Source: Gracilinanus agilis
Taxonomy: Eukaryota
Length of the DNA: 64,000 nucleotides
NCBI RefSeq assembly: GCF_016433145.1
Contig: NC_058133.1
Span: 438,448,287-438,512,286, forward strand
Direction: 5' to 3'
The stretch's first letter is position 1. Every line of letters begins with the position of its first letter. Positions 16,290 to 50,607 of this stretch are shown here, piece by piece. A program made the translations under genes and the position numbers. Below the pieces are notes generated by a model, which was not told where the DNA came from, ran no database searches, and saw only the letters and a program-made list of their open reading frames with translations.

Positions 16290-17230
16290 CTTTTTAGATT
16301 TGGCCCCATGTTCCAGCGTCTCAAGACATTTTTGTCTCAAGACTATTATCTAATGTGTTATCTTTCTTTCCCAGTTTCATGTCACTTGCAAATTTGAAAG
16401 GCATGCCATCCATATTTTTATCTAATTAACTGAAAAAATAAAAAATTAAACCTCACAGGTCTAAGAACAAATCTGTGTAGCCTTTTACTGGAGACCTTCT
16501 TACAAGGTGACACTGAACGACTTGCTCTTTGGGTCTTGCCACTCAATCAATTCTGAATCTACCCAGCTGCATTAACGTCACCCTCCCACCCCCACCCCAC
16601 TGCTCCATTTTATCCACCATAGCATGAAAGGCTAGATAAACTAAATCTCTAGTTCTCCCCCTAATCTCTTAGTCTAGNGAGTCTCAAAAAGAGAAAGTGA
16701 CTGAATGACACAGNNNNNNNNNNNNNNNNNNNNNNNNNNNNNNNNNNNNNNNNNNNNNNNNNNNNNNNNNNNNNNNNNNNNNNNNNNNNNNNNNNNNNNN
16801 NNNNNNNNNNNNNNNNNNNNNNNNNNNNNNNNNNNNNNNNNNNNNNNNNNNNNNNNNNNNNNNNNNNNNNNNNNNNNNNNNNNNNTGAGTGTGGCTTATT
16901 CTTGACAAAGTCAATGCCTTACAACTCCTTTTCTAGATGTTTATTTTTACTAACAGTCCCTTTCATAATAGTGTCTAGAATTTTGCCAGGAATCAAGATA
17001 AAATAGCCCATATTTTGCAGAAACCATTCTCTTCCTATTTTTTTGGAAACTGGAACACCATGTGTGCCTCTCTCTATTCCTGCAGAGGCTCTCCCATTTG
17101 CTGTAGTTTCCCCAAGATTGCCTTATCCTTTGACAGGTATCTCCTCCTTTTGACAACCTCTGAATCTCAAAAATCGAATCCTCAACATCCTCTGTGGACC
17201 TCGATCCTTCCTAATACCTCTTTCATTTCC
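16290..17230 (-). mobile_element. L3/CR1 LINE reverse-transcriptase relic (interrupted by an assembly gap)
   Basis: Antisense CR1-like text (cccagtttcatgtcacttgcaaatttg...; tctagaattttgccaggaatcaag). Confidence 0.55.
16714..16885. other. Assembly gap (N run)
   Basis: 172 N. Confidence 1.
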
Positions 17231-24388: not shown

Positions 24389-24638
24389 NNNNNNNNNNNN
24401 NNNNNNNNNNNNNNNNNNNNNNNNNNNNNNNNNNNNNNNNNNNNNNNNNNNNNNNNNNNNNNNNNNNNNNNNNNNNNNNNNNNNNNNNNNNNNNNNNNNN
24501 NNNNNNNNNNNNNNNNNNNNNNNNNNNNNNNNNNNNNNNNNNNNNNNNNNNNNNNNNNNNNNNNNNNNNNNNNNNNNNNNNNNNNNNNNNNNNNNNNNNN
24601 NNNNNNNNNNNNNNNNNNNNNNNNNNNNNNNNNNNNNN
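24389..24638. other. Assembly gap (N run)
   Basis: 250 N. Confidence 1.
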
Positions 24639-32411: not shown

Positions 32412-32687
32412 CACGGGGCGGGCATCGCGGAGCCGCTTTGACAGGACAGCTCAGAAGGGGACAGCCGGCTGGGAACTAAAGGACTCCAAAACTGGGGTGC
32501 CAGGTACCCAAGAGCAAAGGTCCTTCTGCATTCTTTTCTCCTGTGTGCCCAGCACCACACGTCCCTCTCGCAGGCAGTTCCGTGAGTCAACCACCGACGG
32601 CCAACGGCTCCCTTAGACAAACACCGTCTCAGTTAGCCCCATTCACCTGCGGGTGCAGCTCCCCCAAGGCACCCCGTCCTGCCCGCC

Positions 32688-46273
<13,586 letters not shown>

Positions 46274-46604
46274 GCCACCAGCCTGGCCCTTTGTCCTAGT
46301 TTCCCTTTTCCCTTGCACCTTTTTCCATAGTCCCTGATTCTTCTGTATTCTTCTGTTCCTACTTTCTCCATCCTGTCCCTGAGGCAATATCAACCCTCAG
46401 AATTGCCCCTGCCTCAGCCATTAGGGTGGCATAGCTGTAAGGGACTTGTGGAAGTAAAGGATCCAGTTAGCGACCACTTACCTAAGAGTGAACCAATCTC
46501 TCCCTGAAGATAATGACCCTCCTACTTTGTGTCTAGGCAGTATGCCAGAGACTGGCTAGGAGTGGCTCTGGTGGGAAACAAGCAGCTCTGAGGCTGAGTA
46601 ATGG

Positions 46605-46902
46605 ACCCCCCTGTCCACAAGGAAAATTGATGCCCAACATGCCCTCCTTGTCCACCATGACTAACACCACCATGAAGTTAATGACAAAGAGATTGACATG
46701 GATATGACAGCACCTGAGACAGAAAGAGCTGCGATTGCCATCCAGGGCAGGTTTTGAGACTATCAGAAAAAAAAAAAAAGTTCCGCCTAAGCTGCCAGCC
46801 TTGTCATTTGCCTGTTACCACCTCCCCCTGCACAGATCCTGATCCCATGTATCTTGGTTTCTCTCTTCTACTAACCTGTGAGGCACAGCTGTAAACCCTT
46901 GT
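46605..46902 (+). pseudogene. Degenerate tandem duplicate of the PCP4L1 terminal IQ exon (pseudo-exon in the 3' UTR)
   Basis: 46689-46790 reads [32 protein letters not shown], with 55/66 nt identical to 46169-46234. The acceptor region and 3' UTR blocks also align. In-frame stops at 46662 and 46755. Confidence 0.85.
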
Positions 46903-47672
46903 AATATCCTCTGTCCCCATTACCATAGTAGCAAAGCTCTAAGGAGCCTGAGAAAGCCAATCTCTCCTGTGTGAATAGTACTCAGTAGCAAGGTCCCATG
47001 TCAGTGACTAGGGGCAGGGCAGGAGGTGATAGACCCTTGGGCAATTAAAGCAGAGCAAAGGCTTCAGAGAGTGTTTGGGGGCAGTTTCTATCACATGCTA
47101 AACTTAGAGGTTAGGTAACATTACCTTACAGATTTCTATGTCCCTCTTCCCAACTTCCTCTTATGAGCTGAGCCACAGCAAGTACTAGAGCCTTCCCTTT
47201 CCACATCCCCTTGTCAGATTAAACAGTTTATCACATTAGTGCATGCTGGGTAGATTAGAATTTCAGGGAAGGAAGATGGGGAGTAGTAAAGGCAAAAAAA
47301 GTTCTCTCATTTCTCCCTATACCTCCCACCCAACCACCATTCTCTAAAGACAGGGAAATGAGAACGTTAGAGAAGCTCAAAGATGAGGGGGAAGGCAGAA
47401 AGTGGAGGAATGGGATTAGGATAGATTAAGAGTGAAAGGATATTGAGAGGCAGGAATGAAAGAGCAGTGAGGGGTTTCTGAAGCCTTGAGATAATGCCCA
47501 GTTGAGTGCCCTCTATGAAAAATATCTTTGGGCTCCAACAAGCCTCCCCATCCATATGCCCTGCCTTTGGTCTCCTGAACCCAGTGTCTTCACCTTTCCT
47601 CCAATCTCCATCTGTCCCACTGGGAGGCAGGGAAGAAATAACTGATCCTCCTCCCAAGGTTTTAGCATGTTT

Positions 47673-49689: not shown

Positions 49690-50607
49690 TTTGACACATT
49701 GGTGCTCTCCCAAGTAGGAGGCTTGGCAGAAGAGGCAGGTCTGCCACACGTAGCAACAGCATTGGCAATAGTTTGAATTCTCGGATGAAGAAAACATCAC
49801 GTTGTCACAGAAAAACTGGCGCGACCTTTTCAGGTACTCTAAAGGTACATGGATGGTAGAGCCGCAGTTCCAGTCATAACATGTACAAGTCGAGGCTGAG
49901 GCACAAGCTTATGGGATATCCATGCATATGTCCAAAGTCTATTTTTGCTGGCAAAAATCTTGGAGCAAAGTTGGTGGTTGTGAAGGATAGTTTTACAAGC
50001 AGAGGTACAGGGTGAGGGCAGTGGAAACAGGCTTATGATTGTTTTCCTGAGGAAATGGGCTCTTCTTGGTAGATAGGAGGGAGTCAGTGAAACAGCATCC
50101 ACAGGTATAGCAAGCAGAAATGGTGTCCTGAGTGTGCAACCATTTGTGCCTTTGCATGTTGCTGTGGTTACTGAATTCATGGTTGCAGGGAGGACAAAGG
50201 AACACCTAGGGTGGCTTGCTGGCCCTCTGCTTTTCAAATTGATTCCTTCTTTCTAGAATCTGCTGCTGCTACTTAAGAAGCTTGTCTTTCTCTTGCTATA
50301 AATCTACCTTCTTTCACTTCTACTTCCTGTGTCTATATCTCTGCTGCTTTTGCCACTGGCGCCCAGTGCTTTTTGGGCATCCTCTATGGGGATAGCCACT
50401 TGAGCTTTGCAGTTTTTATTGGTCCTTCAAGCCTTTCTCTAATGCCCTTTCTTTCTGTTGCCTCTTCTAGGACTGCCCTCCGTGGAAAGAGACTTCCTTC
50501 CCACCATTATCCCCTTCCTTCTCTGACTAGTCTTGAGCTGATCCACTTTCTGACCAGCTGGCTTCATCCTCACCACCAGACCTGTAGCACGTAGGCTATT
50601 TCCTATT
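49690..50607 (-). pseudogene. Decayed C2H2 zinc-finger gene exon (3-5 degenerate fingers preceded by an acidic/Gln-Lys-rich segment)
   Basis: A perfect finger CPPCNHEFSNHSNMQRHKWLH (50196-50134), a 7-aa linker, then CYTCGCCF. A third finger CSKIFASKNRLWTYAWISH (49967-49911) has C-x3-F-x5-L-x2-[Y]-x4-H spacing. Many TAG/TAA/TGA stops and frameshifts. Confidence 0.65.

What the first reader, a model, noticed from the sequence alone, without database searches (positions are those of the whole stretch)
46689..46790. Substitution pattern says the duplicate IQ exon evolved under protein-coding constraint
Over the 22 aligned core codons there are 11 differences. Six are synonymous (E, T, P, A, I, F codons) and five are conservative replacements (I/M, L/M, K/R, L/I, K/R). 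Downstream, F/Y and R/K are also conservative. Neutral decay should give mostly, and often radical, non-synonymous changes. The [17 protein letters not shown] string converges on PEP-19/PCP4 as I recall it ([17 protein letters not shown]). This suggests long functional divergence followed by recent pseudogenisation in this lineage. The sample is small (66 nt).
Basis: partly seen in the sequence, partly recalled or inferred. Interest (0 to 1): 0.7.

Follow-up and report, generated by a model that had tools for sequence, protein, structure and literature searches.

The report
Neutral duplicate of PCP4L1 last exon
A second, broken copy of the last coding exon of the calmodulin-related gene PCP4L1 lies in that gene's 3' untranslated region in every marsupial examined; across species it changes like non-coding DNA, so the coding-like pattern seen in this one genome does not show a working exon.

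Summary
Over 22 codons, copy A (46137-46273, the true PCP4L1 last exon) and copy B (core 46689-46769) differ at 11 codons: 6 synonymous and 5 conservative. The inference mostly fails.

- **Origin and age.** Copy B is a ~500-nt tandem genomic duplicate (acceptor tract, coding part and proximal 3'UTR). It is present in didelphids, dasyurids and diprotodonts. It was not found within 3 kb downstream in echidna, platypus or lynx.
- **The A lineage.** Copy A has omega near 0, and at least 2 of the 6 synonymous differences arose on it. Against the proper null (pairwise omega ~0.5, transition bias) the 6:5 split has P = 0.16-0.40.
- **Copy B across six marsupial sequences.** Omega is 1.3-1.7 and the substitution rate is at background. 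Changes are flat across codon positions (8:5:7, against 2:0:9 in A). Frameshifts arose independently in two lineages.
- **The window's copy.** It has lost its acceptor AG and carries two in-frame stops, one of them shared with another didelphid. RNA contigs read straight through it as 3'UTR.
- **The ancestral branch.** Only here is there a hint of constraint: omega 0.26-0.52 (not significant) with mostly conservative early replacements.
- **Other marsupials.** Dasyurids keep an open frame, and a tammar wallaby RefSeq model splices into copy B.

Overall this is an ordinary decaying exon duplicate, apparently undescribed.

The parts
45416..45472 (+). PCP4L1 exon 2 (coding)
   Evidence: tblastn of P0122 and blastn of the mRNA contig L005. 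RNA contigs join 45470 to 46135 across a GT..AG intron; the tool notes the cut fits 2 places further right, i.e. 45472|46137.
46113..46136 (+). Pyrimidine tract and CAG acceptor of exon 3; 5' edge of duplication unit A
   Evidence: It aligns to the tract in front of copy B in all six marsupial sequences.
46137..46273 (+). Copy A: the true last coding exon of PCP4L1 (acidic linker, IQ motif, stop TGA at 46271-46273)
   Evidence: 100% identical to marsupial PCP4L1 proteins. Its 27-codon core is invariant at the protein level from monotremes to lynx to marsupials, omega about 0.
46155..46163 (+). Internal 5' splice-site-like GG|GTGAGG inside copy A (boundary 46157|46158), made by a marsupial-only Gly codon GGT
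   Evidence: Echidna and platypus have GCC and lynx has GCT at this codon. The wallaby RefSeq isoform X1 (P0148) switches from copy A to copy B sequence exactly here.
46274..46596 (+). Proximal 3'UTR, the rest of duplication unit A
   Evidence: It aligns to 46791-47013 with many substitutions and indels. It is transcribed.
46597..46620 (+). Acceptor-tract homologue of copy B; CAG has become CAA at 46618-46620
   Evidence: Five other marsupial sequences keep CAG here. Contigs of organisms A and B read G at 46620.
46621..46688 (+). Copy B linker, with a 42-nt didelphid-only insertion (about 46639-46680) and an in-frame TAA at 46662-46664
   Evidence: Alignments; translation. L005 has CAA where the window has TAA.
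46689..46769 (+). Copy B core: 27 codons homologous to the IQ region, with in-frame TGA at 46755-46757
   Evidence: Codon alignment. PDB hit to PCP4, E=1.3e-05. The TGA is shared with L005.
46767..46779 (+). A-run (the Lys run of the former exon); its length is unstable
   Evidence: 13 A in the window and 14 in the RNA contigs of the same species (table 4). The length differs in every species.
46780..47013 (+). Copy B tail, stop homologue (TAA at 46788-46790) and 3'UTR homologue; end of duplication unit B
   Evidence: Unit alignment. A and B ancestors differ at 69 of 219 aligned sites with 7 indel events.

Best explanation
Copy B is one half of an old tandem genomic duplication of about 500 nt. 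The duplicated unit held the last about 24 nt of intron 2, the whole last coding exon of PCP4L1 and about 300 nt of its 3'UTR. The duplication happened before the living marsupial orders split. The copy now lies inside the 3'UTR of the PCP4L1 mRNA. Throughout crown marsupials it has evolved as unconstrained sequence. In the window's didelphid it is a dead pseudo-exon: the acceptor AG is lost and it has two in-frame stops. It is transcribed only as untranslated 3'UTR. The coding-like 6:5 pattern has three sources. Synonymous-only change on the strongly constrained copy A adds to the count. Transition bias raises the synonymous share. A handful of old conservative replacements may be a remnant of a short early period when the new exon was still spliced and translated. 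Shown here: the tandem genomic origin, the marsupial-wide presence, neutrality in the crown group, the lesions, and transcription as 3'UTR. Inferred: the early functional phase, which I put at roughly even odds.
For: Tandem genomic origin: homology runs from the acceptor tract through the CDS into the 3'UTR. Copy B is present in a second didelphid mRNA (L005), a diprotodont (L004), Sarcophilus, Antechinus and Sminthopsis. The B copies form one clade with 100% bootstrap support on a long stem. No second copy was found within 3 kb downstream in echidna, platypus or lynx. Branch codon models give omega_A about 0, omega_B 1.26-1.31 (P about 0.6 against 1) and crown 1.36-1.39, with dasyurids alone at 2.9. 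IQ-TREE on B alone gives 1.69 (GY) and 1.03 (MG), and 0.001 on A alone. Parsimony rate is 0.278 per site in the B core against 0.353 background (P=0.16). Codon positions are 8:5:7 in B against 2:0:9 in A. Independent disabling events: +1 in L005, +2 in L004, the TGA shared by the didelphids, and TAA plus acceptor loss in the window. RNA contigs of the window's species splice exon 2 to exon 3 and then run unspliced through copy B to 47663.
Against: All five replacements in the window's 22 codons are conservative (P=0.003). Stem omega is 0.26-0.52. The core has no indel between the A and B ancestors, while the UTR homologue has seven. The core diverged less than the UTR homologue (JC 0.18 against 0.41; I expect about 0.28 if B was always neutral, rough P about 0.07). 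Three dasyurids keep the CAG acceptor, the phase and an open frame. A wallaby RefSeq model (P0148) is spliced into copy B in frame. The test has little power: 27 codons, six B sequences and four independent lineages.
Confidence: 0.7

Rival explanations
1. One reading: copy B was a working alternative IQ exon under purifying selection for most of its history and was pseudogenised only recently in this lineage.
For: Pairwise dN/dS is 0.17 and all five replacements are conservative. Stem omega is below 1. Dasyurids keep an open frame and a wallaby model uses copy B.
Against: Crown omega is 1.3-1.7, the rate is at background and codon positions are flat. The TGA is shared by two didelphids, and there are separate frameshifts in L005 and L004. 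The intact dasyurid lineage itself has omega 2.9. Koala-type and wallaby B cores differ at 7 of 27 residues, while copy A differs at 0 of 27 across all mammals sampled.
Confidence: 0.08
2. Copy B is still a functional alternative terminal exon in Australidelphian marsupials. It would be spliced from the internal donor of exon 3 and give a PCP4L1 isoform with a divergent IQ motif. It would be dead only in didelphids and in the L004 lineage.
For: P0148 reads exons 1-2, the first 8 codons of exon 3 and then copy B in frame. The donor-making Gly codon is marsupial-specific. Three dasyurids keep the acceptor, the phase and the open frame.
Against: Dasyurid omega is 2.9 and is not below 1. The three dasyurids are close kin, so they count as one lineage. 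The diprotodont L004 has a +2 frameshift inside the IQ motif. No protein in the 5.8-billion collection shares three 5-residue words with the Sarcophilus B frame. P0148 is a computed model whose RNA support I could not inspect. In the wallaby the frame after the A-run runs on into UTR-like sequence.
Confidence: 0.12
3. Copy B is a retrocopy of PCP4L1 mRNA, or derives from the paralogue PCP4, which would explain its PCP4-like residues.
For: It shares M6, R13 and K28 with PCP4.
Against: It carries the intronic pyrimidine tract and acceptor. It has no exon 1 or exon 2 sequence. It has 3'UTR homology to PCP4L1 and lies in tandem 520 nt downstream. M6 and R13 vary among the B copies. It is only 16 of 22 identical to PCP4, against 15 of 22 for copy A (my count).
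Confidence: 0.01

Closest known systems
[quoted passage not shown]
   Same: Copy B is a direct duplicate of this exon and its flanks. It has 79% nucleotide identity over the core, and in Australidelphians the same intron phase.
   Different: It is not translated in the window's species (lost acceptor, TAA, TGA). It evolves at omega near 1, while the parent exon has omega near 0.
PCP4 / PEP-19 (PDB 2n77 chain B)
   Same: It has the same IQ-region family. Copy B matches at E=1.3e-05, and three of its derived residues equal the PCP4 states.
   Different: The similarity is parallel single-base change, not descent. The flanks show origin from PCP4L1. The Glu-rich element that blocks calmodulin binding in PCP4L1 (Morgan and Morgan 2012, as summarised in PMC5424795) is altered in copy B, but no function follows from that here.
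Tandemly duplicated, mutually exclusive or alternative terminal exons
   Same: It is an adjacent duplicate with its own acceptor and the same phase. One RefSeq model (wallaby P0148) uses it.
   Different: There is no sign of selection on the second copy in living lineages, no use in transcripts of the window's species, and it is disabled in at least three of the six sequences.

Membership tests
Coding exon under purifying selection | dN/dS clearly below 1 across species | tested here: not met
   Omega for copy B is 1.26-1.39 and 1.03-1.69 in IQ-TREE. The stem alone gives 0.26-0.52, not significant.
Coding exon under purifying selection | Excess of third-position change and a slower rate than flanking non-coding DNA | tested here: not met
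   Codon positions are 8:5:7. The rate is 0.278 against 0.353 per site, P=0.16.
Coding exon under purifying selection | Open frame and splice sites kept across lineages | tested here: not met
   It is broken in the window (CAA, TAA, TGA), in L005 (+1, TGA) and in L004 (+2). It is intact only in dasyurids and in the wallaby model.
Tandem exon duplication | Adjacent copies whose homology extends into intron and flank | tested here: met
   The units are about 46113-46596 and 46597-47013 and align over the acceptor tract, CDS and 3'UTR.
Tandem exon duplication | Second copy used as an alternative exon in transcripts | tested here: not met
   Contigs of the window's species and of two related organisms run unspliced through copy B, as does L005. 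Contigs can miss rare isoforms. Only the wallaby model P0148 uses it.
Processed pseudogene (retrocopy) | Intron-less copy of the mRNA, including upstream exons, inserted elsewhere | tested here: not met
   It has the intronic acceptor tract, lacks exons 1-2 and lies in tandem.
PCP4/PCP4L1 IQ-motif family | Sequence homology of the IQ region | tested here: met
   phmmer against the PDB gives E=1.3e-05 for copy B, 5.7e-11 for copy A and 6.9e-09 for Sarcophilus B.
PCP4/PCP4L1 IQ-motif family | Match to the Pfam IQ model | tested here: inconclusive
   No Pfam family at E up to 1 for either copy, including the real exon. The peptides are too short for this test to discriminate.
PCP4/PCP4L1 IQ-motif family | Calmodulin binding of the encoded peptide | not testable with these tools
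   This needs a binding assay.

The most novel reading that the evidence does not exclude
On the marsupial stem two changes arose in the same gene: a tandem copy of the IQ exon, and an Ala-to-Gly codon change that makes a strong internal 5' splice site in exon 3. Together they would let Australidelphian marsupials make a second PCP4L1 isoform. In it, the Glu-rich auto-inhibitory element and the IQ motif are swapped for a divergent, more PCP4-like pair that can bind calmodulin. The wallaby model P0148 and the open dasyurid frames would then be living examples.
Probability: 0.1. Interest if true: 0.55.

Novelty: new member of a known kind. Interest (0 to 1): 0.25.

Why it matters
It matters mainly as a caution on method. 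A pairwise dN/dS between a pseudo-exon and its functional parent is pulled below 1 by the parent's constraint, so it cannot show that the duplicate was selected. Biologically, this is a marsupial-wide exon duplication in a small calmodulin-related brain gene. It appears undescribed: no paper in the searched library links PCP4L1 with marsupials or exon duplication. It gives a clean side-by-side contrast between a near-invariant exon and its drifting twin. There is a small chance that some marsupials still use the twin.

Tried and rejected
- Pfam scan of both copies: no hit, even for the true exon.
- Word search with the 63-aa Sarcophilus copy B frame: no candidate. So no annotated protein of 35-110 aa carries that sequence. 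The wallaby isoform was found only through the whole-protein query.
- DNA could not be fetched for Trichosurus, wombat, wallaby, Monodelphis, Macrotis and one more diprotodont assembly because the files were too large. The Anolis protein was not on record. No sauropsid locus was therefore checked for a second copy.
- My first local alignment used overlapping ranges and returned a self-match; it was redone.
- One model run hit the time limit after the F3x4 stem test, so the equal-frequency variant was not obtained.
- Retrocopy or PCP4 origin was rejected on flank homology.
- Gene conversion between A and B was rejected, because the B copies form one well-supported clade.
- A regulatory 3'UTR role for copy B was rejected for lack of conservation above background.
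- I did not build or search a joined spliced CDS of the window. Exon 3 and the pieces of copy B were searched by reference, and whole-protein queries used database proteins.
- The N runs (16678-16885 and 24389-24638) were left alone.

Full report
**What is there.** The window holds PCP4L1 on the + strand.
- Exon 1 lies at about 32538-32696, exon 2 at 45416-45472, and the last coding exon (copy A) at 46137-46273.
- Copy A is 100% identical to marsupial PCP4L1 proteins.
- The exon 2 peptide is the form shared by Monodelphis and Gracilinanus. An alternative first exon at 35872-35919 matches a Gracilinanus isoform. The genome is therefore a didelphid opossum. My guess is Gracilinanus agilis; this is inference.
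- Copy B is a direct repeat of copy A, 520 nt downstream and 79% identical over 92 nt.

**The observation.**
- There are 11 differing codons in 22: six synonymous and five conservative.
- Next come TGA (46755-46757), R/D, F/Y and R/K.
- Nei-Gojobori dN/dS is 0.17, with Fisher P=0.008 against omega=1.

**Origin.** Gapped and multiple alignments show that homology is not limited to the coding part.
- It starts about 24 nt upstream, in the pyrimidine tract and acceptor. It runs through the stop region and about 300 nt of 3'UTR.
- The units are about 46113-46596 and 46597-47013.
- Copy B is therefore a tandem genomic duplicate, not a retrocopy and not derived from PCP4.

**Distribution.** I fetched PCP4L1 loci by exact protein look-up.
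- Copy B is present in a second didelphid (the spliced mRNA contig L005) and in a diprotodont assembly (L004). It is also in Sarcophilus (L002; L001 is identical to it in the region compared), Antechinus (L003) and Sminthopsis (L006).
- tblastn found no second copy within 3 kb downstream in echidna, platypus or lynx.
- In a nucleotide tree of the units, the B copies form one clade (100% support) on a long stem of 0.45 substitutions per site. This means a single old duplication and no gene conversion.

**State of copy B by lineage.**

| Lineage | State |
|---|---|
| Window | acceptor CAG changed to CAA (46618-46620); in-frame TAA (46662-46664) and TGA (46755-46757) |
| L005 (second didelphid) | keeps CAG, shares the TGA, has a +1 frameshift |
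| L004 (diprotodont) | +2 frameshift inside the IQ motif |
| Three dasyurids | keep CAG, the same intron phase and an open frame to a stop after the Lys run |
| Tammar wallaby (protein only) | RefSeq isoform X1 (P0148, 99 aa) reads copy B in frame |

The wallaby model reads exons 1-2, then the first eight codons of exon 3, then copy B. The switch point is a GG|GTGAGG site at the equivalent of 46157|46158. The Gly codon that creates it is found only in marsupials.

**Is copy B constrained?** I aligned 27 codons for nine A copies and six B copies. Copy A has no amino-acid change at all.
- **Branch models.** My GY94 branch models give omega_A about 0 and omega_B 1.31 (2dlnL 0.29 against 1). The stem is 0.26 (2dlnL 1.27, P=0.26) and the crown 1.39 (P=0.48). 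Dasyurids alone give 2.9.
- **Other frequency model.** With F3x4 the values are 1.26 for B overall, 0.52 for the stem and 1.36 for the crown.
- **Independent check.** IQ-TREE gives 1.69 (GY) and 1.03 (MG) for B alone, and 0.001 for A alone.
- **Rate.** Parsimony change per site in the B core is 0.278 against 0.353 for intron 2 plus the distal UTR (P=0.16).
- **Codon positions.** Changes fall 8:5:7 across codon positions in B, against 2:0:9 in copy A.
- **Identity.** Window-to-Sarcophilus identity is 0.81 in the B core, 0.77 in intron 2 and 0.95 in the A coding exon.
- **Replacement types.** Across all B copies, 8 of 22 distinct replacement states are conservative, which matches the 32% chance rate.

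**Why the pairwise pattern misleads.**
- Of the six synonymous differences, at least two arose on the A lineage, where only synonymous change survives. These are GAA and ACT, judged from the outgroup states. Two more are ambiguous.
- All replacements lie on the B lineage.
- With one constrained and one neutral branch, the expected pairwise omega is about 0.5. Against that null, P(6 or more of 11) is 0.16, or 0.40 with transition bias.

- The old replacements shared among B copies are mostly conservative: L16I/V, K21R and F25Y, and probably K13R and L6M.
- All five replacements in the window's 22 codons are conservative (P=0.003).
- Stem omega is below 1.
- The core has no indel between the A and B ancestors, while the UTR homologue has seven. 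Core divergence is also lower (JC 0.18 against 0.41). My rough expectation under lifelong neutrality is about 0.28, giving P of about 0.07.
- Each of these signals is weak, but all point the same way. An early coding phase is therefore plausible but not shown.

**Expression.** Contigs from four runs of three organisms are spliced from exon 2 to exon 3, so they derive from RNA.
- In the window's species they continue unspliced through copy B to 47300 and 47663.
- No joint from copy A into copy B was seen. Contigs can miss rare forms.
- The A-run has one more A in those contigs than in the window, so the frame after it carries no information.

**PCP4 likeness.**
- By my count from the printed alignments, copy B matches PCP4 at 16 of 22 core residues and copy A at 15 of 22.
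- The PCP4-like states are single-base conservative changes, and M6 and R13 vary among the B copies. This is parallel change, not meaningful convergence.
- A review (PMC5424795) reports that a Glu-rich element next to the IQ motif stops PCP4L1 from binding calmodulin. That element is altered in copy B, which only matters if copy B is ever translated.

**Verdict.** Copy B is an old, marsupial-wide tandem exon duplicate that has drifted neutrally throughout crown marsupials and is a dead, transcribed pseudo-exon here. I found no paper describing it.

**Limits.** The test rests on 27 codons and four independent B lineages. Six marsupial assemblies could not be read. The wallaby evidence is a computed protein model only.

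Noticed in passing
window 46155-46163: All six marsupial copies of exon 3 have a Gly codon GGT that makes a consensus-like 5' splice site, GG|GTGAGG, inside the exon. Echidna and platypus have GCC and lynx has GCT. The wallaby RefSeq isoform X1 switches to copy B exactly at this point.
   Followed up: partly
window 35872-35919: An alternative first coding exon (a 14-residue N-terminus starting MGQSH) matches the Gracilinanus agilis PCP4L1 isoform X1 (P0124).
   Followed up: partly
window 46639-46680: A 42-nt insertion in the copy B linker is found only in the two didelphid sequences. It looks like a partial re-duplication of the acceptor tract (CCTCCTTGTCCACC resembles CCCTGTCCACAA just upstream).
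   Followed up: partly
window 46767-46779: The A-run has 13 A in the window but 14 in the RNA contigs of the same species. Its length differs in every marsupial, so the reading frame behind it shifts between lineages.
   Followed up: partly
window 46530-46571: The related didelphid organisms A and B lack about 40 nt of the proximal 3'UTR relative to the window. It appears as a non-canonical GT..TG 'joint' with one replaced letter, so it is a deletion and not an intron.
   Followed up: no
window 44848-44905: A (CT)n microsatellite of about 55 nt lies in intron 1, about 500 nt upstream of exon 2.
   Followed up: no
L004 1-21954 (minus strand): The source annotation of the diprotodont assembly calls a 126-aa histone-fold product on the opposite strand, with a gene range covering the whole PCP4L1 locus. 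It is probably a long-intron or mis-joined model.
   Followed up: no
window 49690-50607: Another first-stage note reports a decayed C2H2 zinc-finger gene downstream of PCP4L1. I did not examine it.
   Followed up: no
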